Shown here: in pieces, positions 11,719 through 60,489 of the stretch
How the letters are laid out: each line of letters starts with the position of its first letter
Numbering within the stretch: position 1 is the stretch's first letter
Assembly (NCBI GenBank): GCA_002269645.1
Contig: NIVC01001740.1
Span: 124,001 to 188,000 of the forward strand
Direction of reading: 5' to 3'
Source: Macrostomum lignano
Taxonomy: Eukaryota
Length of the DNA stretch: 64,000 nucleotides
Translations under genes and position numbers: made by a program
The notes under the pieces: generated by a model
What the model saw: the letters and a program-made list of their open reading frames with translations, nothing else
What the model was told of the DNA's origin: nothing
Database searches by the model: none

Positions 11719-11753
<35 letters not shown>

Positions 11754-11777: not shown

Positions 11778-11821
<44 letters not shown>

Positions 11822-11918
11822 GACTGACTAACTAACTAACTAACTAACTGACTAAGTAAGTAACTAACTAACCAACTAACTAACTAACTAACTAACTGAC
11901 TAACTAATTAACTAATTG

Positions 11919-11953
<35 letters not shown>

Positions 11954-11954
11954 G

Positions 11955-11993
<39 letters not shown>

Positions 11994-12034
11994 CACTGAC
12001 TAACTAACTAACTGACTAACTAATTAACTAATTG

Positions 12035-12073
<39 letters not shown>

Positions 12074-12125
12074 GACTAACTAACTAACTAACTAACTAAC
12101 TGACTAAGTAAGTAACTAACTAACC

Positions 12126-12161
<36 letters not shown>

Positions 12162-12410
12162 GACTGACTAACTAACTAACTAACTAACTGACTAAGTAAG
12201 TAACTAACTAACCAACTAACTAACTAACTAACTAACTGACTAACTAATTAACTAATTGACTAACTAACTAACTAACTAACTAACTAATTGACTAACTAAC
12301 TAACTGACTAACTAACTGACTAACTAACTAACTGACTAACTAACTAACTAACTGACTAAATAACCAACTAACTGACTGACTTACTAGCTGACTAACTGAC
12401 TAACTAACTG

Positions 12411-12453
<43 letters not shown>

Positions 12454-12674
12454 CACTGACTAACTAACTAACTGACTAACTAACTAATTGACTAACTAAC
12501 TAACTAACTAACTAACTGACTGACTAAGTAAGTAACTAACTGACTAACTAACTGACTAAATAACTAACTGACTGACTAAGTAAGTAACTAACTAACCAAC
12601 TAACTAACTAACTAACTAATTGACTAACTAACTAACTGACTAACTAACTAACTCACTGACTAACTAACTAACTG

Positions 12675-12731
<57 letters not shown>

Positions 12732-14060: not shown

Positions 14061-14171
14061 CTGAGTTGAGGAGAGGGTTAATAAATACAGGCTGTGAAAA
14101 TTAGCGTTCCGTTCCGAACTGGAGGGCACAATTACGATCCCTAAGGTTGAAGAATTTCTCGCCTTAAGTTC

Positions 14172-24089: not shown

Positions 24090-24139
24090 TGGAGTGCGGG
24101 GATGGCTGTGTTAAATATGATGAAAAGAAATTATTAAAC

Positions 24140-24283
24140 ATAAACATAGACACATAGACACATAGACAGATAGACAGACTGACAGTCAGACAGAAATACA
24201 GACAGACAGACAGACAGACAGACAGACCCGCAGACAGACAGACAGACAGACAGACAGATAGACAGACAGACACTAAGACAGGC

Positions 24284-24315
<32 letters not shown>

Positions 24316-24328
24316 CCGCAGACAGACT

Positions 24329-24359
<31 letters not shown>

Positions 24360-24363
24360 TCGC

Positions 24364-24395
<32 letters not shown>

Positions 24396-24630
24396 TGACA
24401 GACAGACCCGCAGACAGACAGACAGACAGACCCATAGACAGACAGACACACAGACAGACCCGCAGACAGACAGACACACACTCACACAGACAGACAGACG
24501 ACAGACAGACAGATCCGCAGAAAGACAGACAGACACACAGACAGACAGATCCGCGGACAGACAGACAGACACACAGACAGACCCGCAGACAGACAGACAG
24601 ACATACATACAGACAGACACTAAGACACAG
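24140..24630. repeat. (ACAG)n microsatellite upstream of the ASB start
   Basis: Direct reading. Confidence 0.93.
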
Positions 24631-27600
24631 AAACATTACAGCCACAAGGTCTAAGACACAACGAGAAATACAGAAAAGCAAGGCAAAGCCAGAAATGAAG
24701 GACAAGCAGACAACACTAAACACCTAAACACTAAGGCAGACAGTGACAGAGTCAAGACAGAAACAAAGAGGGAGACAGAGATTGATAGTCAGACAAGCTA
24801 CCAAAAAAACAACACATAACTAGTTGGATGCATAGCTAGCAAAAGCAACTTACCTTCGCACTTGGCCAATAAATTCATTACTATCGCCAGCTACTGGTTG
24901 ATTTGAATCCTGACGAAACAGCTGGCGAAACAGTTTGCGTAGAGGCATGAGCCAGCTAGCATGAGAACAATTGCAATGGTAGCATTACTAATTAGACTTA
25001 AGTTTTGTCTTAAGTTTTTAAACAGATCTGATTACTACATGTTTAACATCAATAGATAATTTGGAAAGTTTTAGTATAGGTTAGTTCATCTCTTAAGGCA
25101 TATCTAGATTTTGTTATAATTTAGGATATTTTAAGGCATATCTAGATTTTGTTATAATTTAGGATATTATTAAGGCATATCTAGATTTTGTTATAATTTA
25201 GGATATTATTAAGGCATATCTAGATTTTGTTATAATTTAGGATATTATTGTAGTGCCAAAAAGCACAATTCTTATTTTTTAATCGAAATCTTCAGACAGT
25301 TAAAGAACCATGGTACAATTCCTTTGACAATACAAAATGCATTAACCTAAAACCTTAATGATGCATACAGTCATAGACCACAAAGTCAAAGATAATACAT
25401 AGATGGCTAACACTTCTTGATTAAAGTTAGGAAGGTGGCAAAGGATGCATTGGAATAAATTGATAAGGTAGAATCTATGTGCTAGGGGGCCTATCTATGT
25501 AATATATATATGCTATTTCTAATAGTAAATCAATATAAAAATGTTTAATTTAACATTTGAAAATGGAAGTTAGATTAACAAATAACAATTTGTTTTTCAC
25601 AACAAGATTAATACCAAGTCTTAGAATTCATGCTGATTTATGCTAGAAAATCTGGTTTCCATGTACACTAGGGACTTTACAAAGCATATGGATATAGATA
25701 TGGTTATAAAAACATATATTTCCAATACTTTGTTCTAATATTACAGTATTACCAAGACTTAAAAAACCATTTGAGCTGTTGATTTAATAGGGATAAGGGT
25801 AAATAAATTTTGCTAGTTTCAAAGTGAGGGGAACTCATAAGTCCCTAGAATTTAGGACTTAAATAATAGCAATTTTTGTTATACTTAGGTGGTTAAGGTT
25901 AAATATAAGATGAATAGGGGCCTACTTCACTTTTAAAAGGAAGCTCTAAGTCCCTAGCATCTGGGACTAGTATGGGGTTGGGATGATATTGATAAGGGGC
26001 TAATTCTCAAATGCTTTGAGATTGCAATCAAGCAAATTACAGGATTCTTGCTGTCTGGGGGATACTTGCTATCTAGTTCTAGGGTTGCTTACTATTAGGA
26101 TATCTAGGGCTGTGTGCTATAGGGAGATGCTTGCTATAGGCCTAGGGGTTTCTAATTCATTTGTCTACCAACAATTTGTCTGCTAAGTAGATAAAATGCC
26201 CTTTCCTTCTTAAAACTGTTCATCTACTAGGAAATGGGATATGGATAAAGAGTAAAGTAGGGACTAGTAGGGAGCTGCCTAACAACCTCTCTGTCCATTA
26301 ACATTGATATACTTATAATGTTATAAAGCGCTGCATTTATAGGGGTCTTTGATTATCATTTTAACAAACTATTTCACAATACACACCTAAAATAAGAAAG
26401 CTTAACTAAAAATAATGGAATGGAAACTGTTAAAAATTTGATGAAGATAAAAATATTGGCAAATAATTATTCTCATTAAAAAAATTATTAGATGCAAGAC
26501 ATCTGTGCCATTTGTAGAAAGTGTGTGAGCACTCGACAACAAGCTTTGCAATGTGATGATTGCAGTCAATGGCAGCACCAAATATGTGGTTCAGGCATAA
26601 GCCAAAAGGAGTAGGCCAATGAAGAGGTTAATGAAGAGGTTGTGGCCCTTGTGGGTTGGGCAGCTCCCCACCCCCATTTCCCGGCAGATGAACAGTTTTT
26701 GAAAGAGAAAACTTTTTGTCTGCTTAGCAGACGAACTGTCAGCAGACGAAACGACTGGTATCCGCTAGGTTTATAGGCCCTAAATTGAATGCTTGCTTGC
26801 TGTCTGGGGGATGCTTGCTATCTAGGGGATGATTGCTATCTGGCGAGATGCTTGACATCTGGGGAATGCTTTCGACTTAGGGGAATGCCTATTATCTTTG
26901 TGAAGGCTTTATTTTGTGGTGTTTTTTTGTTTATTTTAGAAAAAAGAGATTCATAGCAAACATCTTTGTCCATGACAAATTTACTCAAATAAGGTGAATC
27001 TATAAAACAGAAGAAATCTTTTCTTAAGAAAATGTGCTTTTTTCAATGGAATTCCATGAAAACTTTTGCTCCTTGCTTATTGGGCGCTCCGAAAGGGGGC
27101 ACTAGATTGCTAGTCTATATTATAACTAAACCTAAAAAGTTAATTTCCAAACTAAACTGTCAATAATCGTTCGAAGAAATCTATATTTTAACCACGTGGG
27201 AAGCAAGGAAATGCTTTGAAATCTAGCCGTATCAATGAATAAAAGCAAAGGCAGCCAAAACTTATTAATTTAAAAACATAAGTAGCGCAGCTGGTTAAGT
27301 TGTTTTTTGGCTAGTAAATTTTGTTTAAAAACAGTACTTCTTATAAAACAAAATTCAATTCAATTCAAGGTCTGTTTCTTGATTTTTTCTATTTAATTGC
27401 CATTAAGTTGTATAGACGTTAAAAGCAAGGACCACTAGAAGAAGAAGGGGCCTTTTCATATTGCTTGTTCTGGTTCCAGAACCAGAACCAATTTGTGAAG
27501 TATAACTTTTTGTCTCCATAACTAGAGGGAGATACGTGCTATAAAGTTTCTATTATTGTATGAAAAACGCCAAGAAGAAAGTGAAAAATTGTGCTAAGTG

Positions 27601-27792: not shown

Positions 27793-29190
27793 GGGCCCGT
27801 GCTATAGATTTAAGAGCAAAGAGTAAGGAGTTAGGAGTCAGGAGTGCTCCTTAGCAAGGAGCGAATCAATTTTGTGTGCTATAGAGTTCAAGAATCAAGA
27901 GTTAGGAGCTAGGAGTTGTTCCAAGGATAGAGTGAGGACTTCTAAGGAGTGTAAGGTGATTGGCTAAGGAGTCTGCCTATCTGTGTGCTATATAAAACTC
28001 CTAAATGTATGCACTGTAAGGAGTAATTCTAGCAATTAAGTAACAAGTTCAAACAAGTTTTATTAGGCCCTACCCTGTGAAAAGCGGCTATGAGTACGTA
28101 AAGCAATAAAACCATTTAGGCTACAAGCCTGCCATTTAAATTGATGGAGGGAGTGCATTTAATTATTTGATAGACTGAAGTAAATAAAAAATGGTTTAAC
28201 TGCTATTGTAGTTAATTGCTCTCATTTGATAAACAACTAACACTCGTATAAGAAATATCGTATAAGAAGGGTGCTATTAGAGACCATAAAATTGGTCATT
28301 ATTGTTATTCAGCCAAACATGCTTGTTTTCACTTTTTAGCACTGACAGTACAAAATCAAAGATTTGTGATGTTTTAAGATGCAACATATCTTTGTTGAAA
28401 TTGGTGTTGATTCTCATTGAGCAAAAATCATGACACAGTATGAATCAATGATGACCCACTTTTTGATTTTTAAAAAAGCTTGTCCTTTGCTTAAAATGCC
28501 TAGGTTGCCGATCGTTGGTCCCTCATCGTCCAAGCCTAGGTCGCTATCCGAAAGCATGACAAAAAAGACACTCCTTACTAACCTAAGAGTAAAATTTGAC
28601 CCTTGAAATCTTATCTAGGAGTTAGGAGCTAGAAATGAAATTCGCTCCTTCTATAGGACACGCACTCCTAAACTCACTCCTAAACGGCAATTCCTAGCTC
28701 CTAGCTCATACATGCGCAACTGCTGGCTGACCTGGCCAATCTGGCAATCTGGCTACTGTAAATTGTGGTGGACCAGGGGTAAGTCGCAAAAATGCCCAGC
28801 CTAAAGAATACAGACAATACTAATTAGATGATGAGGCATTTAGCCCTTATAAGACAGTTATAGTTACTCCTGCTGTTTACCCAAAATTGTGTTAGGGTTT
28901 CTTTCACAGGTAAGTCGCATTTTTGGTCAAAAAGTAAGTCGCATGGCCAGTGTAAATCAGGGGGTTGCGCATGTATGTCCTAGCTCCTACTCCCAGATCC
29001 TTATTCTATAGTACGCGACAAACCTTAATGAGGTCTCCTAAATTCACCAAGGAGTCTCCTAACATCCTTAAAGAGCCTCCTAGCTCCTAAAATTTACTTT
29101 TGATTCTATAGCATGGAAAAGCCATCTAGGAGTTAGGAGTTAGGACACTTAAGGATTTTAAGAGTTAAGAGTATTCTATAGTATGGGCCC
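27793..29190. mobile_element. 1398-bp non-autonomous PIF/Harbinger-like (PHIS) element with a CAG TSD
   Basis: TIRs GGGCCCGTGCTATAG / GGGCCCATACTATAG (13/15); CAG duplicated at 27790-27792 and 29191-29193; subterminal taggagttaggag repeats in both orientations; no ORF. Confidence 0.8.
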
Positions 29191-33250: not shown

Positions 33251-35519
33251 TTAATGCTAGAAACCAAAATATCATCCCAGAAGCTATCAGAAAGAGAGGA
33301 TATGGCAAAAAAGTATCCAAGCTATATAAACTTCAATATAATTATTTAAAGATTTCATATCTATATTAAAAAATGCTACAATAAACTTCTATAGACTATT
33401 ATTCAAACAAATTTTACTTGCAAGTATTAATAACATTTTTAACCTACACATAAAAAAAATTAGTATGGAAGCATATAGTAAAAGAATATTAAAACTATAA
33501 AATTTAAAAAATGGTCCTATAATTGTTTTTCTATGCATTAGAATCTTATGAGTTTTGAGGTATGAATTTTACTAAAAACTGACAAAACTTGCTAATATTA
33601 ATGTTAGATTGATTCTAATTTCATTACATATTTATAACAAACTTTAAAACCAATACATTTGTACTAAAAGTCATTGAGTTATATGCCTTTGAATATAAAT
33701 TTTATATTTTTACAAAAGCACCAATTGCAGCACTAGCTTAGCATAGTGTATACTAGCATGGTGTAGGCCAATCTGTGCGCAAGTAGTCCATGCAAACCAA
33801 ATGACCCTTTTAGGATCTTCACTAGTTGCTTAATTTGCTCATGCTAGCCTCTTAGTAACTTATCCAAGATAGCTGCGAAGTTGGCACTTGGCACCTAGGC
33901 CAAGTGATGTGTGTCAAGATTAAGGTGACAAGCGGTGCAAAGTTATTTTTTGTATTTGACAGTAGAATCAGGAATCTTGAGCGCATAGCTCTAGGTGGAG
34001 TCTTGAGAGGAAGAAGGGCTAAAACCCAGAGGGGAGCTCTGCAAAAGAAAGAGTATACTGCCATAGACTAACTAAACAATAACAGAACGAAAGTTGAGCA
34101 AAGCTAAGTCACATAATATACAATATAGACAGAAAAACAATAATGCACTAAAGCTATAGGCTGAGCTCTAATGCACAACACCAAGATCTACCTCATTTGT
34201 TCTTGGTTGGATCTACCTTGGTTTGTTCTTGTTGGTTAGGATGACATAATCCTCACTTTGCTTGGCATGTAATATCTTTTCCTTTGATTCATTCGCTCGC
34301 ATGTAACCTCTTCTTCACTTTCTCTCTCTCCTTTGTGCTCAAGCTTTGATTCCTCTCCCCTTTCACTTTCCTCAATCTTTTCATCCAAGCTTTCACACTG
34401 AGTACTCTCTCATTTGCTTCCTTCTCTCTAATTCCTACTTTTGCACCTACCTAGATACCTACCTACCTAGGAAATAGATTCCTAACTAAAAAGAAAATTT
34501 GTTTCAATTCTGTTTTATGTATTAAAATTGACATTTTCAATAATACTACTTTTCTAAAATAATACAATAAGTATTTTAGTAGTATTATAGTTCAATAATA
34601 CTACTAAAATTATTTTTTTTCTAGAGTATCTCTTTCTATGTTGCTTAATTTATTTTTTTAGTTATCTACTATGTTATTTTTTATATTATAAAATACATTT
34701 TCAAGTGTTTTCATTTTGGTCAAATTTCTATATCTTACCAGTCCCTACTAATAGTGAGAGACAAGTATAATTAAAAAAAAACAAGCAAACATTGAAGTAT
34801 TACAAGTAAGGCCTAGCTTTTGCTAACTTTAACAGGTGCTAACCATTTTGGCAATAGAGATTCACCATGGACAAATTCTGTGACAATGAAGGAGGCAAAT
34901 TCAGACTCCAGTTTAATAAAATCATAGCAACTGCTCTTATGAACTAGAAAAATCTACAAGTGGAGATGCTGAATGGTGTTAATAATGGCCATTTTGATTT
35001 CTCATTGTGTTTGAGTAAAAGTTCTTATTGAGATTGAAGATTGAGAACCGAAATGCAAAATGAAATTTAGAAGAGAATGGAGCATTTTAATAAAGGCATT
35101 CATTATTTACAAGGTACCATGCAAATAATGACAAATGATTTCAAATCTATTGAATGAGAGTACCTTTAAGAAAACCTTACCAAATTCACTTTCCATCACC
35201 TTTTTTGCTTTTTTGCAAGTTTGTAGAAAATCAGTTGAGCTGCTAACACCCTTGAGCTAACTGAATTCTAAATAAGACATTTTATTTAGTTAAGACAGAG
35301 TGCCTATTTTTAACCTGAAAAGGTATTTCATTTTTAAAATAAGAAAAATGCATTCGTGGTGTTGCTGCTATACAAAAGACTATACAATGTACAAGGCCTA
35401 GGCTTAGTAAATTAATAGATGCTCCCATCTTATAACTCTCATACTACTGTCTGATACTACTCTCACCAACCACACTCTAAAAGCATTTTATAGCTGAGTA
35501 CAATGCAAATTTCTGCTTT

Positions 35520-38500
35520 ATGTTGGCATCATTGCTGCTCCTTCCTCTAAGCCGTCGCTGTTGTAACAGCTTTAGGCTTCAAAAATGCAGCATCCGCTGC
35601 CGCCATTCTGCATCAGCAGATTATCAAAATGGCAGCCGGCAGCGTCTTGTAATTCTGGGCACGGGCTGGGGCAGCTACTCGGCTCTGCGCAATGTTGACA
35701 AATCAAAATTTGATGTCATTGTCGTGTCGCCTAGGAATCACTTTCTATTCACCCCGCTGCTGTGCTCAACAACTGTTGGTACGCTTGAGTTTCGTTCCAT
35801 TATTGAGCCGGTGCGCGAGTATGGCTTCAGACAGTCGGACCATTTCCATCTGGCCGAGGCCACTGAGGTGGACTTTAATCTGCGTGAGGTCACCTGCCGT
35901 TCCTGTTTGGGAAGTCGAGCATCCTATCAGATTGGCTATGATCGATTGATTATTGGGGTGGGTGCGCTCACTAATACCTTTGGCGTGCCCGGTGTTAATG
36001 AGCACGCCTTCTTTCTCAAGGTGAGATTTGAGTAAGGCCCTAATAAAATATTTAAAGTCTGGATTTATCCCCGTGTAATTTATCCTTAAAGGTGTCTGTT
36101 AATCCCTTGATTTCGGATTCTTAATAATGTCTTCTATTCTCTTAATTTGGTATTATTAAAGGTTTCTGCTAATTCCTTAATTTGAAGTTTTTAGGGTGTC
36201 CGGCAATCCCTAGTTTAGGATTCTTGAAAATGTCCAGTAATTCCTAGTTTGGGATTGTTAAAGGTGTCCAGTCATTCCTAGTTTGGGATTGTTAAAGGTG
36301 TCCAGTAATTCCTAGTTTGGGATTGTTAAAGGTGTCCGGTAGTCCCTAGTTTGAGATTCTTAAAGATGTCCGGTAGTCCCTAGTCTGGGATCCTTAAAGA
36401 TGTCCGGCAATCCCTAGTTTGGGATTGTTAAAGATGTCCGGTAGTCCCTAGTTTTGGATTCTTAAAGATGTCCGGTAGTCCCTAGTTTGGGATTGTTAAA
36501 GATGTCCGGTAGTCCCTACTTTTGGATTCTTAAAGATGTCCGGTAGTCCCTAGATTTGGATTCTTAAAGATGTCCGGTAGTCCCTAGTTTGGGGTTCTTA
36601 AAGATGTCCGGTAGTCCCTAGTTTGGGGTTCTTAAAGATGTCCGGTAGTCCCTAGTTTTGGATTCTTAAAGATGTCCGGTAGTCCCTAGTTTGGGATTCT
36701 TAAAGATGTCCGGTAGTCCCTAGTCTGGGATCCTTAAAGATGTCCGGCAATCCCTAGTTTGGGATTGTTAAAGATGTCCGGTAGTCCCTAGTTTTGGATT
36801 CTTAAAGATATCCAGTAGTCCCTAGTTTGGGATTGTTAAAGATGTCCGGTAGTCCTTACTTTTGGATTCTTAAAGATGTCCGGTAGTCCCTAGTTTTGGA
36901 TTCTTAAAGATATCCGGTAGTCCCTAGTTTGGGATTGTTAAAGACGTCCGGTAGTCCCTAGTTTGGGATTCTTAAAGATATCCGGTAGTCCCTAGTTTGG
37001 GATTGTTAAAGATGTCCGGCAATTCCTAGTTTGGGATTGTAGGATTCTATTGCTAACTATAAATCGCATAGATTGCCCATAGCTAATATGAAATATGAAA
37101 AAACCTCTGGCAGGAGGTGAGCGACGCCAGGCAAATCCGTGAGCGCCTGATTGAGAACACTGAGCTGGCCCAGCAGGCCTGGATCAGTCCAGACGAGCGG
37201 GCACGCCTGCTGCACACTGTCATTGTGGGCGGCGGACCGACCGGTGTGGAATTCGGCGCTGAATTGTACGACTTTGCTCGGACAGATTTGGCCAGGCTGT
37301 ACCGGCACAAAGCCGCCGATGTGCGCGTCACCCTGGTCGAATCGGCCCAGATTCTTGCCTCGTTCGACGCCTCGTTGCGTAATTATGCGGAGAAAAAGAT
37401 TCGAGCTAGAAAAAATTTCGACTTGCGACAGGGAACTGTTGCGTCGGTTGACGCCCAGGGAGCGGCGCTCAGGTTTGTGTAGCTCCGCAGACTGAATTTT
37501 TACAGTCACGTGACCATTTGTCTTAGATCATAAAAGTCACGGGACCATTCGTCTTAGATCATAAAAGTCACGTGACCATTCGTCTTAGACCTTAAAATTT
37601 ACGTGATCATTTGTCTTAAACCATCTAAAGTCACGTGACCATTCGTCTTAGATCATAAAAGTCACGGGACCATTCGTCTTAGATCATAAAAGTCACGTGA
37701 CCATTCGTCTTAATCCATAAAAGTCACGTGACCATTCGTCTTAAACCTTAAAAGTCACGTGACCATTCGTCTTGGATCATAAAAGTCACGTGACCATTCG
37801 TCTTAATTCATATAAGTCACGTGACCATTCGTCTTAGACCTTAAAAGTCACGTGACCATTCGTCTTAGAACTTGAAAGACACATAGTCAGACTTTAGATA
37901 TCGCCAGATTTTTAGGGAGTTGACCAGCTTGTTTGAGGTGACGTAATTTTATTGTCACGTGACCTTTTTTTCTTAAAAGTCACAAGATTTCTATAGCGTG
38001 AGCAACCTGTAAGTAAGATTTTTTCCGGACTATAGAAATCATTTGGATTTCTTACGGTAATGTAATCAGCTTTCTTAGAATGTCTTAGAAGAGTCACGTG
38101 TTTTTCACAGTTATGCGACTAGCCCTTGTTTCAAAGTCAAATGATTCTTAGTCACGTGACCATCGCTAATAATAATGACATTTTTGTATAGTCATTTGAT
38201 CAATCTCCTTCAAAGTAACGTGAGCAGAATCTTATAAAAATCACTTGATTTCCTACAGGCACGTGACCAGAGCGTTCGGGGAAGTCACGTGATTCGTAGC
38301 AATTCATACGCTAGAGGTCTATAACTACAGCCCCATAAATTACACTCGGATAACTCCCACCCGCGCAGAGACGGCAGTCGCTTGCCTGCAGGCCTGGTTG
38401 TGTGGAGCACTGGCTTGGCGCCGCGGCCTTTCATACGCGATCTAGACGCGCCTAAGAGTCCCAGCGGTCAGCTTTTAACAGATCCGCAGCTGAGAGTTCT

Positions 38501-38891
38501 GGCTGATAAAAGTGGCCGATCATTTGCTATTGGAGATTGCGCTTCGATAGTTGACGGTCCGCTGCCGTGCACGGCTCAGGTGGCTGAGAGGCAGGGGCGC
38601 TACCTGGCTAATCGGCTCAATCAGGATCGAACTGGGCCTCTGTCAGAATCTAGCAGCGGCGCTCAACTCCAAGATGAACCGTTTCGTTTTGCTGGCCGCG
38701 GCATGCTGGCTTATATTGGCGAGTTTAAAGCTCTGACTGACACGCCCGGCGTGAAACTGCACGGATTCACATCTTGGCTGCTGTGGCGGTCGGCCTATCT
38801 GACTAGGCTGGGCAGCTGGCGGCTCCGGCTGCAGGTGCCCGTGGACTGGACTAAAGCGCTGCTCTTTGGCAGGGACACCTCCATGTTCTAG
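35520..38891 (+). CDS. Type II (alternative, rotenone-insensitive) NADH:ubiquinone oxidoreductase NDH-2, Ndi1/NDA-like; exons 35520-36020, 37114-37472, 38369-38891
   Basis: First Rossmann motif LVILGTGWGS, SPRNHFLFTPLL, GTLEFRSIIEP, YDRLIIGVGA, FLK|EVSDA, second Rossmann motif IVGGGPTGVEF, VWSTG, AIGD, AQVAERQG, GMLAYIG, LLWRSAYL. Phases 0 and 2 are compatible; 1383 nt = 460 aa; Arg/Ser/Leu-rich presequence. Confidence 0.95.
36195..37040. repeat. 34-bp minisatellite (gatgtccggtagtccctagtttgggattcttaaa)n in NDH-2 intron 1
   Basis: About 24 tandem units. Confidence 0.95.
37504..37870. repeat. 31-bp minisatellite (aaaagtcacgtgaccattcgtcttagatcat)n in NDH-2 intron 2
   Basis: About 12 units, most carrying the palindrome GTCACGTGAC. 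Confidence 0.92.
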
Positions 38892-38892: not shown

Positions 38893-39730
38893 GGGTTGAG
38901 GGAGATTAGAGAGGGTTGAGGGAGATTAGAGAGGGTTGACGGAGATAGGAGAGAGTTGAGGGAGATTAGAGAGTGTTGAGGGAGATAGGAGAGAGTTGTG
39001 GGAGATAGGAGAGAGTTGAGGGAGATTAGAGGCGATTCAAGAAGATTAGAGAGAGTTGAGGGAAATAAGAGAGAGTTGAGGGAGATTAGAGGTGATTCAA
39101 GAAGATTAGAGAGAGTTGAGCTGGAAATAAGAGAGAGTTGAGGGAGATTAGAGGCGATTCAAGAAGATTAGAGAGAGTTGAGGGAAATAAGAGAGAGTTG
39201 AGGGAGATTAGAGGCGATTCAAGAAGATTAGAGAGAGTTGAGGGAAATAAGAGAGAGTTGAGGGAGATTAGAGGCGATTCAAGAAGATTAGAGTTGAGCT
39301 GGAAATAAGAGAGAGTTGAGGGAGATTAGAGGCGATTCAAGAAGATTAGAGAGAGTTGAGGGAAATAAGAGAGAGTTGAGGGAGATTAGAGGCGATTCAA
39401 GAAGATTAGAGAGAGTTGAGGGAAATACGAGAGAGTTAAGGGAGATTAGAGGCGATTCAAGAAGATTAGAGAGAGTTGAGGGAAATAAGAGAGAGTTAAG
39501 GGAGATTAGAGAGAGTTGAGAGAGTTGAGAGAGATTATAGGATTGAGGAAGATTAGAGGATTGAGGGAGATTAAAGGATTGAGGGAGATTAGAAGATTGA
39601 GAGAGAATAGAAGATTGAGAGAGATTAGAGGATTGAGGGAGATTAGATAGAGCTGAGAGGTTTAGAGATGGTTGATGGAGATTAAAGAGAGTTAAGAGAG
39701 ATTACAGAGACGAGGGAGATTAGAGAGGGT
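38893..39730. repeat. Purine-rich gagagttgagggagatta repeat starting at the NDH-2 stop
   Basis: Tandem units with an internal ~60-bp higher-order repeat. Confidence 0.9.
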
Positions 39731-40703
39731 TGAAAGCTTGAATTATGGAACAGCTGCTCAAATGGTTTTAGCTACGAGTACTCGTATTTTTACAGGTTAG
39801 TCTAACTATTGTGTAGCTGTAGAGAAGTTTAAAAATAGCTGTTTGTAGTGTTGAAAGTGTTTTATCATTAGCTTGCACAGAACTAAAGATTAGATTAATT
39901 GCTCTTGATGAACTTACATTGTATTTTATTACTGTTTTATAACAATTATACTCCTATATACTTCATATGATATTATTTATGCTATTCCATGGTTCCTATT
40001 TGGCACCCTGTTTTTATGATTAGTGGGATATTGGGATAATTATTAGGATTTCGTTCAAAACTGTCAATCAATTTTCAAATTTGAGGGTAATCTGCAACAT
40101 GGAGTCTGCAGACTTCTGCAATTTGTGTGAAAAGTAAAGTCATTCTAAAACACTATTGATATGTACACCCTGAAGTCTGTCTGACCCTTGGTCTGGGGGG
40201 GGGGGGCTGAGTGGGTGAGCGGCACAAACAAACCAGAAAAAGCAGACAAACTCCATATGCTTACAGTTTCCGTTCTGATTGAGTTACAAAGTTGAGACTT
40301 TATATTTGGACAGAGAATGAGTCCATAAAGAATTGTGTCAAGTTTAAAGTCAATCGCATCATGTGGCAGGATTTTGGGGTGGTTATCTGGCTGAAAACAA
40401 GTGACGAGGGCGACGCAAGTGGCTCTGGGACCCTTCTTGGCCCAGGTACCGTTTTCAGGGCTATAATTGACGTTATACAAATGTATAGCAAAATCTGACT
40501 GTAATTTGCGCTCAGTATGCCTAATAGTAATAAGTAGGCTAAAGAATGGAATAGAACCTCTTCTGCATTGTACAGATAGCAAGTGTGCTAAAAGCACAGC
40601 AGAATGTTCTACTCTGAATATGTTAAGTACATAGTACATAATGCCACTGCAAATAAATTTCAGTACTGGATTAAAACAAAACCAAACTGTAGCAACAAAA
40701 ATC

Positions 40704-41144
40704 ATGGTGAGCCGTCTGCGCGACCTGGACATCTACGGCAACGAACTGGCCGACCGCGCCTACGTCCTTGAGCCGGCGCCGGCCTCGCCGCTGGAGCCGC
40801 TGGTGTCGCCGGCCAGGCAGGCTGTGGAATCAGCCGTGGACACGACCGCCATCTCGGCCGCTTGGCAGCGGGGCCAGGCGGTTGCCGCCACCGGCTCCGC
40901 GCACAGCTGGGAGACCTGGGAGCGAGTCCGGGCGGATCCCGGCCTGGTTGCCAGGGCCGCTCTGGTCGGTCTGTGCGGCCTCGGCGGCGTCGTGGCCGGC
41001 TATCGAGGCGGCGGCCTGCGGCGACTCGCCTACGGAGCGCTGGGCCTGACGGCCGGGGCCGGGCTGTGCTACCCCGCCGAGCTGGCCGACGCCTCTGTCC
41101 GAGGGTTCGATTTTGTTCGCGAGAGAAGCACCGGCGGGAAATAA
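40704..41144 (+). CDS. MICOS complex subunit MIC26/MIC27 (apolipoprotein O family), single exon
   Basis: ATG in aaaatcATGG context; 146 aa; N-terminal LDIY; two hydrophobic helices linked by a basic loop (AALVGLCGLGGVVAGYRGGGLRRLAYGALGLTAGAGLCYP), matching the APOO/APOOL G-x-x-K-K...x-CYP pattern. Confidence 0.8.
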   Translation: MVSRLRDLDIYGNELADRAYVLEPAPASPLEPLVSPARQAVESAVDTTAISAAWQRGQAVAATGSAHSWETWERVRADPGLVARAALVGLCGLGGVVAGYRGGGLRRLAYGALGLTAGAGLCYPAELADASVRGFDFVRERSTGGK

Positions 41145-46215: not shown

Positions 46216-46589
46216 AAACTAGATCCAAACAAACCAGCAAATGCTACAATGATTTCAACCATTACTAAACTTACTTTTCAACCGGTGTTCTGTGGAATCT
46301 CCGTGGCAAAAGCTGCGGTTTCCTTCAAAGTAGACGCTGATTTATATTCTGCAACAGCGGAAGCCCTCCAAAAAGCCTCTGACCGCTTTTTGCTACTGCG
46401 CCTGCGCTGTTTCGACTGCTGAAAACTCGTTTCAAGCGTGTAGTGATTCGCTCATTAGTGACGCCGCCAACTTCTTCTCCATCTCCAGTCAGTGTCGAAC
46501 ATAAAGGTGAAAAAATCTCCATGCCAGCTTCAATAAATGTTCTGGTGCAGTCTGACACTTTCAGATGAAGCCTTAAGGTCTTAGCATGG

Positions 46590-49500
46590 TAAGGATGGTG
46601 ATAGCTGAGGATGCTGGATGGTGATAGCTGAGGATGCTTGATGGTGATAGCTGAGGATGCTGGATGGTGATAGCTGAGGATGTTTGATGGTGATAGCTGA
46701 GGATGCTTGATGGTGATAGCTGAGGATGCTTGATGGTGATAGCTGAGGATGCTGGATGGTGATAGCTGAGGATGCTTGATGGTGATAGCTGAGGATGCTT
46801 GATGGTGATAGCTGAGGATGCTTGATGGTGATAGCTGAGGATGCTTGATGGTGATAGCTGAGGATGCTTGATGGTGATAGCTGAGGATGCTTGATGGTGA
46901 TAGCTGAGGATACTTGATGGTGATAGCTGAGGATGCTTGATGGTGATAGCTGAGGATGCTTGATGGTGATAGCTGAGGATGCTTGACGGTGATAGCTGAG
47001 GATGCTTGATGGTGATAGCTGAGGATGCTTGATGGTGATAGCTGAGGATGCTGGATGTTGATAGCTGAGGATGCTGGATGGTGATAGCTGAGGATACTTG
47101 ATGGTGATAGCTGAGGATGCTTGATGGTGATAGCTGAGGATGCTTGACGGTGATAGCTGAGGATGCTTGATGGTGATAGCTGAGGATGCTTGATGGTGAT
47201 AGCTGAGGATGCTTGATGGTGATAGCTGAGGATGCTTGATGGTGATAGCTGAGGATGCTGGATGGTGATAGCTGAGGATGCTTGATGGTGATAGCTGAGG
47301 ATGCTTGATGGTGATAGCTGAGGATGCTGGATGTTGATAGCTGAGGATGCTGGATGGTGATAGCTGAGGATGCTTGATGGTGATAGCTGAGGATGCTTGA
47401 TGGTGATAGCTGAGGATGCTTGACGGTGATAGCTGAGGATGCTGGATGTTGATAGCTGAGGATGCTGGATGGTGATAGCTGAGGATGCTTGATGGTGATA
47501 GCTGAGGATGCTGGATGGTGATAGCTGAGGATGCTTGATGTTGATAGCTGAGGATGCTTGATGGTGATAGCTGATGATGCTGGATGGTGATAGCTGAGGA
47601 TGCTTGATGGTGATAGCTGAGGATGCTTGATGGTGATAGCTGAGGATGCTTGATGGTGATAGCTGAGGATGCTTGATGGTGATAGCTGAGGATGCTTGAT
47701 GGTGATAGCTGAGGATGCTTGATGGTGATAGCTGAGGATGCTTGATGGTGATAGCTGAGGATGCTTGATGGTGATAGCTGAGGATGCTTGATGGTGATAG
47801 CTGAGGATGCTGGATGGTGATAGCTGAGGATGCTTGATGGTGATAGCTGAGGATGCTTGATGGTGATAGCTGAGGATGCTGGATGGTGATAGCTGAGGAT
47901 GCTTGATGGTGATAGCTGAGAATGCTGGATGGTGATAGCTGAGGATGCTTGATGGTGATAGCTGAGGATGCTTGATGGTGATAGCTGAGGATGCTGGATG
48001 GTGATAGCTGAGGATACTTGATGTTGATAGCTGAGGATGCTTGATGGTGATAGCTGAGGATGCTTGATGGTGATAGCTGAGGATGCTTGATGGTGATAGC
48101 TGAGGATGCTTGACGGTGATAGCTGAGGATGCTGGATGTTGATAGCTGAGGATGCTGGATGGTGATAGCTGAGGATGCTTGATGGTGATAGCTGAGGATG
48201 CTGGATGGTGATAGCTGAGGATGCTTGATGTTGATAGCTGAGGATGCTTGATGGTGATAGCTGAGGATGCTGGATGGTGATAGCTGAGGATGCTTGATGG
48301 TGATAGCTGAGGATGCTTGATGGTGATAGCTGAGGATGCTTGATGGTGATAGCTGAGGATGCTTGATGGTGATAGCTGAGGATGCTTGATGGTGATAGCT
48401 GAGGATGCTTGATGGTGATAGCTGAGGATGCTTGATGGTGATAGCTGAGGATGCTGGATGGTGATAGCTGAGGATGCTTGATGGTGATAGCTGAGGATGC
48501 TTGATGGTGATAGCTGAGGATGCTTGATGGTGATAGCTGAGGATGCTGGATGGTGATAGCTGAGGATGCTTGATGGTGATAGCTGAGGATGCTTGATGGT
48601 GATAGCTGAGGATGCTTGATGGTGATAGCTGAGGATGCTATCACCAGCTGGATGGTGATAGGATGGTGATAGGATGCTTGATGGTGATAGCCGAGGATGC
48701 TGGATGGTGATAGCCGAGAATGCTGGATGTTGATAGCTGAGGATGCTTGATGGTGATAGCTGAGGATGCTTGATGGTGATAGCTGAGGATGCTTGATGTT
48801 GATAGCTGAGGATGCTTGATGGTGATAGCTGAGGATGCTGGATGGTGTTTGAGGATGCTTGATGGTGATAGCTGAGGATGCTTGATGGTGATAGCTGAGG
48901 ATGCTTGATGGTGATAGCTGAGAATGCTGGATAGTGATAGCTGAGGATGCTGGATGGTGATAGCCGAGAATGCTGGATGGTGATAGCTGAGGATGCTTGA
49001 TGGTGATAGCTGAGGATGCTGGATGGTGATAGCCGAGAATGCTGGATGGTGATAGCTGAGGATGCTGGATGGTGATAGCTGAGGATGGTGGATGGTGATA
49101 GCTGAGGATGCTTGATGGTGATAGCTGAGGATGCTTGATGTTGATAGCTGAGGATGCTTGATGGTGATAGCTGAGGATGCTTGATGGTGATAGCTGAGGA
49201 TGCTTGATGTTGATAGCTGAGGATGCTTGATGGTGATAGCTGAGGATGCTGGATGGTGTTTGAGGATGCTTGATGGTGATAGCTGAGGATGCTTGATGGT
49301 GATAGCTGAGGATGCTTGATGGTGATAGCTGAGAATGCTGGATGGTGATAGCTGAGGATGCTGGATGGTGATAGCTGAGGATGCTTGATGGTGATAGCTG
49401 AGGATGTTTGATGGTGATAGCTGAGGATGCTTGATGGTGATAGCTGAGGATGCTTGATGGTGATAGCTGAGGATGCTGGATGGTGTTTGAGGATGCTTGA

Positions 49501-50960
49501 TGTTGATAGCTGAGGATGCTGGATGGTGTTTGAGGATGCTTGATGGTGATAGCTGAGGATGCTTGATGGTGTTTGAGGATGTTTGATGGTGATAGCTGAG
49601 GATGCTTGATGGTGATAGCTGAGGATGCTTGATGGTGATAGCTGAGGATGCTTGATGGTGATAGCTGAGGATGCTTGATGGTGATAGCTGAGGATGCTTG
49701 ATGGTGATAGCTGAGGATGCTTGATGGTGATAGCTGAGGATGCTATCACCAGCTGGATGGTGATAGGATGGTGATAGGATGCTTGATGGTGATAGCCGAG
49801 GATGCTGGATGGTGATAGCCGAGAATGCTGGATGTTGATAGCTGAGGATGCTTGATGGTGATAGCTGAGGATGCTTGATGGTGATAGCTGAGGATGCTTG
49901 ATGGTGATAGCTGAGGATGCTTGATGGTGATAGCTGAGGATGCTGGATGGTGTTTGAGGATGCTTGATGGTGATAGCTGAGGATGCTTGATGGTGATAGC
50001 TGAGGATGCTTGATGGTGATAGCTGAGAATGCTGGATGGTGATAGCTGAGGATGCTGGATGGTGATAGCCGAGAATGCTGGATGGTGATAGCTGAGGATG
50101 CTTGATGGTGATAGCTGAGGATGCTGGATGGTGATAGCCGAGAATGCTGGATGGTGATAGCTGAGGATGCTGGATGGTGATAGCTGAGGATGGTGGATGG
50201 TGATAGCTGAGGATGCTTGATGGTGATAGCTGAGGATGCTTGATGTTGATAGCTGAGGATGCTTGATGGTGATAGCTGAGGATGCTTGATGGTGATAGCT
50301 GAGGATGCTTGATGTTGATAGCTGAGGATGCTTGATGGTGATAGCTGAGGATGCTGGATGGTGTTTGAGGATGCTTGATGGTGATAGCTGAGGATGCTTG
50401 ATGGTGATAGCTGAGGATGCTTGATGGTGATAGCTGAGAATGCTGGATGGTGATAGCTGAGGATGCTGGATGGTGATAGCTGAGGATGCTTGATGGTGAT
50501 AGCTGAGGATGTTTGATGGTGATAGCTGAGGATGCTTGATGGTGATAGCTGAGGATGCTGGATGGTGATAGCTGAGGATGCTTGATGGTGATAGCTGAGG
50601 ATGCTTGATGGTGATAGCTGAGGATGCTGGATGGTGTTTGAGGATGCTTGATGTTGATAGCTGAGGATGCTGGATGGTGTTTGAGGATGCTTGATGGTGA
50701 TAGCTGAGGATGCTTGATGGTGTTTGAGGATGTTTGATGGTGATAGCTGAGGATGCTTGATGGTGATAGCTGAGGATGCTGGATGGTGATAGCTGAGGAT
50801 GCTTGATGGTGTTTGAGGATGTTTGATGGTGATAGCTGAGGAGGCTTGATGGTGATAGCTGAGGATGTTGGATGGTGATAGCTGAGGATGCTTGATGGTG
50901 TTTGAGGATGTTTGGTGATGATAGAGCTGTATGCTTTGATGGCGCCCAAGGATGCTTGAT
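46590..50960. repeat. 23-bp satellite (tgatagctgaggatgcttgatgg)n, array 1
   Basis: About 190 units; the 23-aa period (69 nt = 3 units) explains the 1458-aa and 687-aa ORFs. Confidence 0.97.
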
Positions 50961-53395: not shown

Positions 53396-53642
53396 GCATT
53401 CGATAATCCATTGACATTTAAATGTAAGGAATCGCTATATGCATGAATATACTCGTATGGAGCCTTGAAATTCCTCACTAATTCCGTTAAGTCCTATTCG
53501 ACATTACGATCGAGCTGTATTGGCCTCATTTCATATAAGTTACTTAAACATAAGGAGACCCTGTCACATTCCAGTTCAGCTATTATATAGACTATATTGA
53601 GCTCGAGTGAAACTCAAATACTTCATCAGCAGCAATCCTTCC

Positions 53643-57673: not shown

Positions 57674-58574
57674 GTCTGGGCTGGAAAATTGTCAACTTCA
57701 GTTGCGACTTTTTGGATAACGAGTTTTTTTATTTTGGTCGTTGATTATTCTGTTATATTGTTGCAGTCTGTTTTTATCAATTTTATGTTGCCATGCCAAT
57801 TTGGTTGGGGATGTCAAACCGCGGGTACAGGATAAGCAAAAATTTCCATCCCAACAGGTGCTGCAGAGTGTACGGTAGCATTCCCTGTTGCTTGGTCAGC
57901 TTAATCTGTGAGCTCTTAGGTTCTCATCGGAGGGAGGGGTAAAAGTCATTACTGACCCTCTTGCAGAAGACTCACTCCGGCTCATGACTATAGCCTCACT
58001 CTTGTCATCCCAGTAGCCTAGCTCCGTCTTTCCAGTGGGTAGCCTGCCGATTCTGGCTCTTTAAGCTGGCTATCACGGACATTACATGTATAATGGATGC
58101 TCAGCTTTTAAACTGTTGAATCCCAATTCTTGAAAAAAAATTTTAATCATATTAATGTGCTTTTGGCAGAAGAGACTGCTTGCAATAAAACTCCTGACGT
58201 GGTTGGGGGGGGGGGGGGCAAGTGGCTACAAAGAGGCGCTGATTAAACCCCAATCAAATTCAATATCCAATTAATATCCAACCAATTTATTGTGCTATAA
58301 CACTATATATGGCTTTCCTAAATCCCTTGATGCCGCGCAAGGCAAGTTACGAGTATATGCTGGCACCCATCACACACACTCGCGTATATGCGCGTTTAGA
58401 AAATTGACTGCATTGGTCTGTTAAAAATGCGGCCCCTGCCTTCCCTTTCCTAGATATACTGGCTACAGACCACAGACCAAGGACTTCTGGACTAGAAATT
58501 CATTTACGCATGCATCTGCATATACGCGATGTTTATTACGAGATTCCGTTTGTCTTGTCCATTTCTCTCGTGAT

Positions 58575-60298: not shown

Positions 60299-60489
60299 AA
60301 GGGATCGAGGACTGATCCCCGGTTGCAACAAATTATAATAAACGGCCCCCTAACTCCACACACTGATGCTCGCGCGTCATACACTGTACTGCAGGCGTAG
60401 CTCAGGATAAAAAGTATAAAATCATCAAACAAAAAAACTATGATTGAATAGAACCGATAGACCGACAAGACTTTGTTAAACGTCAAAGC

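What the first reader, a model, noticed from the sequence alone, without database searches (positions are those of the whole stretch)
35520..38891. Intact intron-containing type II NADH dehydrogenase (NDH-2) in an animal genome
Seen: a complete 460-aa protein with both GxGxxG-type folds, an acidic residue ending the second beta strand (VTLVES, suggesting NADH preference), no EF-hand insert, a C-terminal membrane-anchor segment and a presequence. Known: NDH-2 (yeast Ndi1/Nde1, plant NDA/NDB) is absent from vertebrates and insects and patchy in Metazoa. Inference: a matrix-facing, non-proton-pumping bypass of complex I, possibly linked to hypoxia or sulfide tolerance; relevant as a source enzyme for complex I bypass work.
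Basis: partly seen in the sequence, partly recalled or inferred. Interest (0 to 1): 0.75.

Follow-up and report, generated by a model that had tools for sequence, protein, structure and literature searches.

The report
Flatworm alternative NADH dehydrogenase (NDH-2) gene
This is an intact three-exon nuclear gene of the free-living flatworm Macrostomum lignano for a single-subunit "alternative" NADH dehydrogenase that can bypass respiratory complex I; the enzyme family is already well known from many invertebrates, so the gene is real but ordinary.

Summary
Window 35520-38891 (+) holds three exons with canonical GT..AG introns that splice to 1383 nt, encoding 460 aa.

The window is 100% identical to Macrostomum lignano contig NIVC01001740.1, and the protein is already in UniProt (A0A1I8HLR4) without a functional name.

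It is a true NDH-2:
- Pfam Pyr_redox_2 and NDH2_C both match.
- Yeast Ndi1 scores 4e-63 over the full length, against 1e-5 for FSP1/AIFM2 and 7e-5 for SQR.
- The top 28 structural matches are all NDH-2.

It belongs to the animal clade. It is 55-64% identical to orthologues in molluscs, annelids, echinoderms, cnidarians, tunicates and others. Metazoan monophyly has 89% bootstrap support, a choanoflagellate is the nearest outsider, and intron 1 is shared with Lottia. Contamination and horizontal transfer are therefore rejected.

Animal NDH-2 has been described since 2011, and Ciona NDX has already been used for complex I bypass. This is a new member of a known kind, not a surprise.

Matrix orientation, expression of the full-length mRNA and any link to hypoxia or sulfide remain inferences.

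Side findings:
- A paralogue is disrupted by a transposon and lacks the ATG, which the spliced leader may supply.
- The deposited gene model uses an unproductive alternative splice site.

The parts
35520..36020 (+). Exon 1 (aa 1-167, phase 0 end). Holds the presequence-like N-terminus (aa 1 to about 40, nt 35520-35639) and the FAD-binding Rossmann motif GTGWGS (aa 47-52, nt 35658-35675).
   Evidence: ORF and splice donor AAG|gtgagat. Aligns to Ndi1 from aa 34. The intron position after FFLK is shared, with the same phase, with the Lottia gigantea orthologue.
36021..37113 (+). Intron 1 (1093 nt, gt..ag). It is almost entirely a 34-bp tandem repeat (36197-37038, 24.8 copies).
   Evidence: It is 87% identical to intron 1 of the paralogue, against 99% for exon 1.
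37114..37472 (+). Exon 2 (aa 168-286 plus 2 nt of R287). Holds the NADH-binding motif GGGPTGVE (aa 206-213, nt 37228-37251) and the beta-2 terminal glutamate E243 of VTLVES (nt 37339-37341).
   Evidence: Acceptor ctggcag|GAGGTG and donor CTCAG|gtttgtg. Pyr_redox hit at aa 201-275. E213 and E243 are invariant in 44/44 aligned sequences.
37473..38368 (+). Intron 2 (896 nt, gt..ag, phase 2). Contains a 31-bp tandem repeat (37504-37869, 11.8 copies) carrying the palindrome GTCACGTGAC.
   Evidence: Eleven of the 12 window matches to GTCACGTGAC lie in this intron, where 0.01 are expected.
38259..38292 (+). Alternative 3' splice site used by the deposited model PAA64560.1. Its acceptor tttcctacag|G lies 110 nt upstream of the productive one. 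The frame then reads R-HVTRAFGEVT-stop, giving a truncated product without the C-terminal third.
   Evidence: Exon 1 (from 35559) + exon 2 + 38259-38292 translates exactly to P0122.
38369..38891 (+). Exon 3 (last nt of R287, aa 288-460, stop TAG at 38889-38891). Holds the quinone-site motif AQVAERQ (aa 356-362, nt 38574-38594) and the NDH2_C membrane-association domain (aa 397-456, nt 38697-38876).
   Evidence: Acceptor cccgcgcag|AGACGG. Pfam NDH2_C 1.7e-15. The AF2 model shows a beta-sheet at residues 407-426 and two terminal helices at 428-441 and 445-461, in P0001 numbering, which is window numbering plus 8. No 19-residue stretch is hydrophobic enough for a transmembrane helix (maximum Kyte-Doolittle mean 1.05).
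38895..39733 (+). A 20/60-bp tandem repeat array starting 4 nt after the stop codon, presumably 3' UTR or flank. The first AATAAA/ATTAAA-type signals are at 39570 and 39681.
35494..35522 (+). Start-codon context ...gctgagtacaATGcaaatttctgctttATG. The ATG at 35520 sits exactly where the paralogue has a CAG splice acceptor. An out-of-frame upstream ATG lies at 35503.

Best explanation
[quoted passage not shown] It was inherited vertically within Metazoa.

Shown here: three exons splice to a 460-aa flavoprotein. It has an FAD Rossmann fold, an NADH Rossmann fold ending in the NADH-type glutamate, the AQxA quinone-site motif and the NDH2_C amphipathic membrane-association domain. It has no transmembrane helix, no Fe-S motif and no EF-hand.

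Inferred from the family: the basic N-terminus imports it into mitochondria. There it sits monotopically on the inner membrane, most probably on the matrix side. It passes two electrons from NADH via FAD to ubiquinone without pumping protons and without rotenone sensitivity. That gives the worm a bypass or overflow route around complex I. When that route matters (hypoxia and re-oxygenation, sulfide, complex I inhibition) is conjecture.
For: Gene model:
- Canonical splice sites and 1383 nt in frame.

Family:
- Pfam Pyr_redox_2 1.3e-37 and NDH2_C 1.7e-15, both above cut-off.
- PDB sequence search: Ndi1 4e-63 over aa 34-456, PfNDH2 3e-55, bacterial NDH-2 1e-25 to 1e-38, but FSP1 1e-5 and SQR 7e-5.
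- AF2 model (pLDDT 76.5, pTM 0.74): Foldseek ranks 1-28 are all NDH-2, with TM about 0.72 to Ndi1 and E 9e-38.
- Motif residues are conserved, with E213 and E243 in 44/44 sequences.

Animal origin:
- The window is 100% identical to M. lignano contig NIVC01001740.1 (243 kb).
- Neighbouring genes are a multi-exon COX15, ITPK1, an ankyrin-repeat gene, an ApoO-like gene and a retroelement.
- The best hits are more than 100 metazoan orthologues at 55-64% identity.
- The nearest non-animal cluster is a choanoflagellate at 48%.
- An NJ tree puts it inside a metazoan clade with 89% bootstrap.
- The position and phase of intron 1 are shared with Lottia.

Selection:
- Against the paralogue there are 13 synonymous and 6 non-synonymous differences apart from the start codon (ATG in the window, CAG in the paralogue), dN/dS 0.15.
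- Exons are 97-99% identical between copies, introns 87-90%.

Function by analogy:
- Ciona NDX is mitochondrial and restores respiration under rotenone in flies.
Against: - No activity, localisation or expression data for this protein were available.
- The only transcript-derived model at the locus (PAA64560.1) uses an alternative acceptor at 38259 and encodes a truncated 284-aa product.
- No transcript-derived protein more than 64% identical turned up in the protein collection.
- Orientation (matrix or intermembrane space) cannot be read from the sequence.
- The quinone motif is AQVAERQ rather than the AQxAHQ of Ndi1 and E. coli. This is a clade-wide variant shared with other animals, a choanoflagellate and a streptophyte.
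- An out-of-frame upstream ATG at 35503 could reduce translation if it lies in the mRNA.
Confidence: 0.85

Rival explanations
1. It is an NDH-2, but it faces the intermembrane space (an 'external' enzyme like yeast Nde1/2 or plant NDB). It would then oxidise cytosolic NADH rather than bypass complex I for matrix NADH.
For: Eukaryotic NDH-2s occur on both faces of the inner membrane. Orientation is not encoded in any motif tested here. The N-terminus begins with a short hydrophobic run, LASLLLLPL.
Against: - There is no EF-hand, which is typical of many external enzymes.
- The hydrophobic run is only about 9 residues, too short for a stop-transfer anchor, and is followed by a classic arginine-rich stretch.
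- The orthologous Ciona NDX supports respiration under rotenone in flies, which implies access to matrix NADH.
- Database names by similarity are 'internal ... NDA1-like'.
Confidence: 0.2
2. The locus is transcribed but is functionally decaying or mostly unproductive. The paralogue is already broken, and this copy yields mainly a truncated isoform.
For: - The paralogue L005 has a 297-bp MITE in exon 2 directly before GGGPTG and no genomic ATG.
- The deposited model of the window copy stops at 38292 through an alternative acceptor.
- No M. lignano transcript-derived full-length protein was found in the collection.
Against: - The window copy has an open 460-codon frame with canonical splice sites and no lesion.
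- dN/dS is 0.15, and exons are much better conserved than introns between copies.
- All 44/44-invariant catalytic residues are retained.
- MAKER models in the older assembly predict the full-length product.
- One annotated isoform per gene does not exclude the productive one.
Confidence: 0.12
3. It is not NDH-2 but a related two-dinucleotide-fold flavoprotein: AIFM2/FSP1/AMID, AIF or sulfide:quinone reductase.
For: The families share the Pyr_redox_2 fold and give weak hits: FSP1 1e-5, SQR 7e-5; SQR at Foldseek rank 41 and beyond.
Against: - Ndi1 scores 4e-63 over the full length, 57 or more orders of magnitude better.
- The NDH2_C domain is present.
- Foldseek ranks 1-28 are all NDH-2.
- In the tree it nests with NDH-2 of animals, protists, fungi and E. 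coli.
Confidence: 0.01
4. The gene is a contaminant or a recent horizontal transfer from a non-animal (protist, fungus or bacterium).
For: NDH-2 is patchy in animals. No other flatworm orthologue appeared among the best 120 hits.
Against: - It sits in a 243-kb M. lignano contig between animal genes, and a second syntenic paralogous locus lies on a 1.1-Mb contig.
- It has spliceosomal introns filled with host-type tandem repeats.
- One intron is shared with a mollusc.
- The closest relatives are all animals, and the metazoan clade has 89% bootstrap.
Confidence: 0.01

Closest known systems
Metazoan alternative NADH dehydrogenase (NDH-2, 'NDX' of Ciona intestinalis; Matus-Ortega et al. 2011; Gospodaryov et al. 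2014, 2019)
   Same: 55-64% identity over more than 90% of the length to orthologues in Mollusca, Annelida, Brachiopoda, Nemertea, Echinodermata, Hemichordata, Tunicata, Cnidaria, Placozoa, Tardigrada, some Nematoda and Chelicerata. Same length class (410-490 aa), same motifs including AQVAER and the ...FGRD.S.F C-terminus. Inside the metazoan clade.
   Different: It comes from a flatworm. I found no open paper that reports NDH-2 in that phylum. The key reviews were not readable here. It has only two introns, against 6-7 in Lottia and Capitella.
Saccharomyces cerevisiae Ndi1 (internal rotenone-insensitive NADH:ubiquinone oxidoreductase; PDB 4G9K, 4G6G, 5YJW)
   Same: Full-length homology (E 4e-63, about 33-35% identity) and the same fold (TM about 0.72). 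Both Rossmann motifs, the NADH-type glutamate, the TAQVA quinone-site core and the C-terminal membrane domain are shared.
   Different: It lacks the Ndi1 insertions (for example penhlglhqaepae). The quinone motif reads AQVAERQ rather than AQVAHQE. It lies outside the fungal branch in the tree.
Plant NDA1/NDA2 (internal alternative NAD(P)H dehydrogenases)
   Same: Several databases name the animal orthologues 'internal alternative NAD(P)H-ubiquinone oxidoreductase A1/A2-like'. A streptophyte homologue shares AQVAE and the C-terminal FGRDISRF.
   Different: Only about 45-47% identity to the nearest green or red algal clusters. No direct comparison with Arabidopsis NDA or NDB sequences was possible here.
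AIFM2/FSP1 and sulfide:quinone reductase
   Same: Same superfamily (Pyr_redox_2 two-dinucleotide-binding fold).
   Different: Only marginal similarity (1e-5 and 7e-5). They lack NDH2_C.

Membership tests
[quoted passage not shown] | Two Rossmann dinucleotide-binding motifs (FAD first, NAD(P)H second) in one polypeptide of about 45-55 kDa | tested here: met
   GTGWGS at aa 47-52 and GGGPTG at aa 206-211. Pyr_redox_2 matches aa 42-363 at 1.3e-37.
[quoted passage not shown] | C-terminal membrane-association domain (NDH2_C) and no transmembrane helix (monotopic) | tested here: met
   PF22366 scores 57.3 bits against a cut-off of 27.7 at aa 397-456. The model shows a beta-sheet plus two terminal helices. 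The maximum 19-residue Kyte-Doolittle mean is 1.05.
[quoted passage not shown] | Quinone-site motif AQxAxQ after the GD motif | tested here: inconclusive
   AIGDC...TAQVAERQ: the AQxA core is invariant. The His-Gln of Ndi1 and E. coli is Glu-Arg here and in 41/44 and 35/44 aligned sequences respectively. This is a clade-wide variant, not a defect of this gene.
[quoted passage not shown] | Closer in sequence and fold to characterised NDH-2 than to AIF/FSP1, SQR or CoA-disulfide reductases | tested here: met
   Ndi1 4e-63 against FSP1 1e-5 and SQR 7e-5. Foldseek ranks 1-28 are NDH-2.
[quoted passage not shown] | Rotenone-insensitive, non-electrogenic NADH:quinone oxidoreductase activity with non-covalent FAD | not testable with these tools
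   Needs an enzyme assay or yeast ndi1-delta complementation.
[quoted passage not shown] | NADH rather than NADPH preference: an acidic residue at the end of beta-2 of the second Rossmann fold | tested here: met
   E243 in VTLVES aligns with the Glu of Ndi1 IHLVEA and is invariant in 44/44 sequences. That this residue sets specificity comes from the literature (Hao and Rasmusson 2016, cited), not from a test here.
Metazoan NDH-2 (NDX) clade | Groups with animal orthologues to the exclusion of fungal, plant, protist and bacterial NDH-2 | tested here: met
   NJ tree of 44 sequences and 429 columns gives metazoan monophyly including this protein at 89% of 200 bootstraps. The nearest non-animal cluster is Salpingoeca at 48%. 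Placement within Metazoa is unresolved.
Metazoan NDH-2 (NDX) clade | Nuclear gene with spliceosomal introns in animal genomic context, with intron positions shared with other animals | tested here: met
   Intron 1 (after FFLK, phase 0) is shared with Lottia. Intron 2 is not shared with Lottia, Capitella or Nematostella. The context is M. lignano.
Metazoan NDH-2 (NDX) clade | Mitochondrial targeting and matrix-side action | not testable with these tools
   Only compositional support: 7 basic and 1 acidic residue in the first 40 aa, modelled as disordered. No targeting predictor or experiment was available.
EF-hand (Ca2+-regulated, external NDB/NDE-type) NDH-2 | EF-hand insertion in the C-terminal half | tested here: not met
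   No EF-hand Pfam hit at E up to 0.01. The protein is 460 aa with no insertion relative to Ndi1 in that region.
AIFM2/FSP1 (AMID) | Best similarity to FSP1/AIF and no NDH2_C domain | tested here: not met
   FSP1 scores only 1e-5 with no stretch passing on its own, and NDH2_C is present.

The most novel reading that the evidence does not exclude
Two strands.

(a) M. lignano is a flatworm with RNAi and transgenesis, and it natively carries an intact NDH-2. It could therefore be the first tractable animal in which the still unknown physiological role of a native animal NDH-2 can be tested by loss of function. NDH-2 may survive in this basal free-living lineage while being absent from the parasitic flatworms.

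(b) The gene copies differ in how the initiator Met is supplied. In the paralogue and in the older-assembly models, codon 1 is a CAG that fits the trans-splice acceptor consensus. The AUG at the 3' end of the spliced leader would then create exactly the same MLASLL... protein. In the window copy a genomic ATG replaces that acceptor. That would be a natural swap between a spliced-leader-donated and a genome-encoded start codon.
Probability: 0.3. Interest if true: 0.5.

Novelty: new member of a known kind. Interest (0 to 1): 0.27.

Why it matters
Alternative NADH dehydrogenases are studied as single-polypeptide bypasses of complex I, for mitochondrial disease models and ageing work. An animal-derived enzyme is of some interest as a source protein. 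However, Ciona NDX and dozens of other animal orthologues are already available, so one more sequence adds little.

The modest added value is organismal. Macrostomum lignano is an intertidal, oxygen-tolerant flatworm with genetic tools. A native NDH-2 there would allow knock-down tests of what the enzyme does in an animal, for example under hypoxia and re-oxygenation, sulfide or complex I poisons.

The locus also corrects the public annotation. Both NCBI models are truncated, and the UniProt entries are unnamed and lack a start codon.

Tried and rejected
- Exact-protein look-up of P0001 found no contig on record.
- A second homologue search with aa 270-460, spanning the exon 2/3 junction, was meant to catch partial Macrostomum transcripts. 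It returned nothing above 61% identity, so it gave no expression evidence either way.
- Literature searches for NDH-2 in flatworms, Platyhelminthes or Macrostomum found nothing.
- The two key papers on the animal distribution (Matus-Ortega 2011; McDonald and Gospodaryov 2019) are not held. I therefore cannot say whether Platyhelminthes were already listed there.
- A Biopython BLOSUM62 bootstrap timed out and was replaced by a Kimura-distance NJ bootstrap. No ML phylogeny program was available, and no named plant NDA/NDB, fungal Nde or AIF sequences were on hand, so the internal/external subfamily question was not addressed phylogenetically.
- AOX, rquA and SQR in the rest of the genome could not be checked from one window.
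- I considered whether the GTCACGTGAC array in intron 2 is a regulatory E-box, CLEAR or HRE-like cluster. This cannot be separated from a plain tandem repeat with the data here.
Full report
**1. The observation**

The coordinates are exact. An ATG at 35520 opens a frame that runs to a donor AAG|gtgagat at 36020/36021. The frame resumes after ctggcag| at 37114 and leaves at CTCAG|gtttgtg (37472/37473). It resumes again after cccgcgcag| at 38369 and ends at TAG 38889-38891.

The three exons total 1383 nt, giving 460 codons plus stop. Exon G+C is 51-59%, against 39-40% in the introns.

- GTGWGS at aa 47-52. Strictly this is GxGxGS, the same variant as Ndi1 GSGWGA.
- GGGPTG at aa 206-211.
- VTLVES with E243.
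- No EF-hand.
- A C-terminal NDH2_C domain at aa 397-456.
- An arginine-rich N-terminus, with 7 basic and 1 acidic residue in the first 40 aa.

**2. Whose genome it is**

The best protein hit is 100% identical: UniRef A0A1I8HLR4, an unnamed 'Pyr_redox_2 domain-containing protein' of Macrostomum lignano.

Fetching the contigs behind two partial NCBI models showed that window 25559-48292 is 100% identical to NIVC01001740.1:149559-172292. This contig is 243 kb and belongs to assembly GCA_002269645.1. The gene therefore lies at record 159520-162891.

The rest of the window is typical animal nuclear DNA:
- a multi-exon COX15 (10658-14129, minus strand)
- an ITPK1-like gene
- an ankyrin-repeat gene
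- a weak ApoO/MIC26-like gene 1.8 kb downstream
- a reverse transcriptase
- very long tandem arrays

The 'non-animal contaminant' refutation therefore fails.

**3. What the protein is**

Sequence evidence:
- Pfam gives Pyr_redox_2 (1.3e-37) and NDH2_C (1.7e-15, 57 bits against a cut-off of 27.7).
- Against all PDB sequences, the best matches are yeast Ndi1 (4e-63, aa 34-456), Plasmodium NDH2 (3e-55) and bacterial NDH-2s.
- FSP1/AIFM2 reaches only 1e-5 and SQR only 7e-5.

Structural evidence:
- An AlphaFold2 model built from 37 animal orthologues has pLDDT 76.5 and pTM 0.74. The first ~45 residues are disordered.
- Searched against the PDB, NDH-2 structures take ranks 1-28. Ndi1 scores TM about 0.72 and E 9e-38. 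CoA-disulfide and persulfide reductases and SQR appear only after that.

Residue-level evidence:
- E213 (GGGPTGVE) and E243 are invariant in 44/44 aligned NDH-2.
- The TAQVA core of the quinone site is conserved.
- The following residues read E-R-Q, where Ndi1 and E. coli have H-Q. Nearly all animal sequences, a choanoflagellate and a streptophyte share this variant, so it marks the clade and is not a defect.
- No 19-residue stretch is hydrophobic enough for a transmembrane helix. This fits a monotopic membrane enzyme.

Grouping with AIFM2/AMID or SQR is therefore rejected.

**4. Where it belongs in evolution**

The next-best 119 hits are animal proteins at 54-64% identity. They come from gastropods, bivalves, a brachiopod, annelids, a nemertean, echinoderms, hemichordates, tunicates including Ciona, cnidarians, Trichoplax, tardigrades, some nematodes, spiders and a scorpion. 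No vertebrate or insect appears.

In a library clustered at 50% identity, the animal clade collapses to essentially one representative. The next clusters are a choanoflagellate (Salpingoeca urceolata, 48%), a ciliate, an amoebozoan, a streptophyte alga and a red alga.

I built a neighbour-joining tree from 44 sequences and 429 columns, using Kimura distances and 200 bootstraps. Ndi1 was taken from the alignment and E. coli Ndh. The tree recovers Metazoa, including the Macrostomum protein, at 89%. The order inside Metazoa is unresolved.

I mapped exons of three orthologues onto their genomic loci. Intron 1, after FFLK in phase 0, is shared in position and phase with Lottia gigantea. Intron 2 is not shared with Lottia, Capitella or Nematostella.

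Together this indicates vertical inheritance of an old holozoan gene, not horizontal transfer.

**5. A second copy, and what it says about selection**

A syntenic paralogous locus (L005, NIVC01000006.1) carries the same gene.

Evidence of purifying selection:
- Exons are 97-99% identical between the copies. Introns are 87-90% identical and the 5' flank is 94%.
- Besides the start codon there are 13 synonymous and 6 non-synonymous differences (dN/dS 0.15, dS 0.038).

The paralogue has two lesions:
- A 297-bp element lies in exon 2, immediately before GGGPTG. It has 14-bp perfect terminal inverted repeats (CATACATGCGCAAC) and an 8-bp target duplication (GTCATTGT). A related copy of the element lies at window 28781-28944.
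- Codon 1 is CAG instead of ATG.

The window copy is thus the intact one.

**6. Expression caveat**

The NCBI model for this locus is PAA64560.1, which is 5'-partial. It reproduces my exon 1/exon 2 junction. It then uses an acceptor at 38259 inside intron 2, which gives ...GAALR-HVTRAFGEVT-stop. As far as I know, the Mlig_3_7 annotation was built from mapped transcripts, so I treat this model as transcript-derived. I did not check that point here.

The model for the paralogue (PAA94571.1) reads into the transposon and stops.

Only the MAKER-type UniProt models of the older assembly predict the full-length product. I could not retrieve transcript contigs.

Full-length expression is therefore likely, given the purifying selection and the intact frame, but it is not shown.

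**7. Mechanism**

Shown: the gene is intact, and the fold, cofactor motifs, NADH-type glutamate and membrane domain are those of NDH-2.

Inferred from the family:
- import into mitochondria through the basic presequence
- monotopic binding to the inner membrane
- electron transfer from NADH via FAD to ubiquinone, with no proton pumping and no rotenone sensitivity

Matrix orientation is the more probable reading. There is no EF-hand, the presequence looks simple, and Ciona NDX restores respiration under rotenone. It is still an inference, and I give about 0.2 to an external orientation.

The hypoxia or sulfide link is conjecture. M. lignano is an intertidal interstitial worm whose oxygen physiology has been studied (reference). 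Nothing ties that work to this gene.

**8. Comparison with what is known, and novelty**

Animal NDH-2 was described by Matus-Ortega et al. 2011 and reviewed by McDonald and Gospodaryov 2019. Current papers state that many aquatic invertebrates have NDH2 and AOX.

Ciona NDX has already been expressed in Drosophila as a bypass enzyme.

The present protein is already deposited, although unnamed or truncated.

I found no open paper that mentions NDH-2 in a flatworm, but the two key surveys were not readable here.

The finding is therefore a new, poorly annotated member of a known kind. A specialist would not be surprised. The interest lies mainly in M. lignano being genetically tractable.

**9. 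Side observation on the start codon**

The M. lignano spliced leader ends in ...TTGCATG, and the trans-splice acceptor consensus is [T/C]TNCAG. Flatworm leaders are known to be able to donate their 3' AUG as initiator.

In the paralogue, and in both UniProt models, codon 1 reads Q, encoded by CAG within gcTTTCAG|TTGGCA. Trans-splicing there would produce AUG-UUG-GCA..., which is exactly the MLASLL... N-terminus that the window copy encodes with its own ATG.

This is a hypothesis. It needs spliced-leader read mapping to test it.

Noticed in passing
window 35511-35525 vs L005 9965-9979: The start codon differs between gene copies. The window has ctgctttATGttggca, while the paralogue and both UniProt models have ctgctttCAGttggca (codon 1 = Q). 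TTTCAG fits the M. lignano trans-splice acceptor consensus, and the spliced leader ends in ATG. The leader could therefore donate the initiator and give the same protein. The window copy has replaced the acceptor with a genomic ATG.
   Followed up: partly
L005 11677-11973 (equivalent to window 37226/37227); related copy at window 28781-28944: The paralogue's exon 2 is interrupted, directly before the NADH-binding GGGPTG, by a 297-bp MITE-like element. It has 14-bp perfect terminal inverted repeats (CATACATGCGCAAC) and an 8-bp target-site duplication (GTCATTGT). A 79%-identical partial copy of the element lies elsewhere in the window.
   Followed up: yes
window 38259-38292: The deposited NCBI model PAA64560.1 uses an alternative 3' splice site 110 nt upstream of the productive one. 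This gives a premature stop and a 284-aa product. It could be an unproductive (NMD-type) isoform or an annotation choice.
   Followed up: partly
window 37504-38160 (intron 2): Eleven exact copies of the 10-bp palindrome GTCACGTGAC (an E-box core, CLEAR-like, containing ACGTG) lie in intron 2, where 0.01 are expected by chance. Most sit within a 31-bp tandem repeat, and two more lie downstream of it. This could be a regulatory cluster or just a satellite.
   Followed up: partly
window 36197-37038 and 38895-39733: Intron 1 is almost wholly a 34-bp tandem repeat (24.8 copies). A 20/60-bp tandem array starts 4 nt after the stop codon, so the 3' UTR would consist of repeat sequence. Both arrays are present but diverged in the paralogue (79-87% identity).
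   Followed up: partly
window 35503-35550: An out-of-frame upstream ATG lies 17 nt before the start codon. It opens a 15-codon uORF that overlaps the main ATG, which matters only if this stretch is in the mature mRNA.
   Followed up: no
window 10658-14129 (-) and 40641-41144 (+): Two other genes for mitochondrial inner-membrane proteins lie in the same window as NDH-2. One is a multi-exon COX15/heme A synthase (Pfam 1.6e-54), about 21 kb upstream of NDH-2. The other is a weak ApoO/MIC26-like ORF (1.8e-5, below the Pfam cut-off), about 1.8 kb downstream. The ApoO-like neighbour is conserved at the paralogous locus. This is probably coincidence.
   Followed up: no
window 1-4273, 24013-24723, 46573-50949, 58463-60331: Very long tandem-repeat arrays produce spurious ORFs of up to 1458 aa. 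The arrays at 46.5-51 kb and 58.4-60.3 kb share the same unit.
   Followed up: no
window 53607-54152 and 61997-62398; 62553-63676: A duplicated segment encodes an F5/8-type-C (galactose-binding-like) domain in two near-identical copies about 8.4 kb apart. The second copy lies next to a retroelement pol fragment (RVT_1, 8.6e-12).
   Followed up: no
hit list (not in the window): NDH-2 orthologues are present in spiders, a scorpion, tardigrades and several nematodes. The common statement that alternative respiratory enzymes were lost in 'arthropods' therefore holds for insects but not for chelicerates.
   Followed up: no
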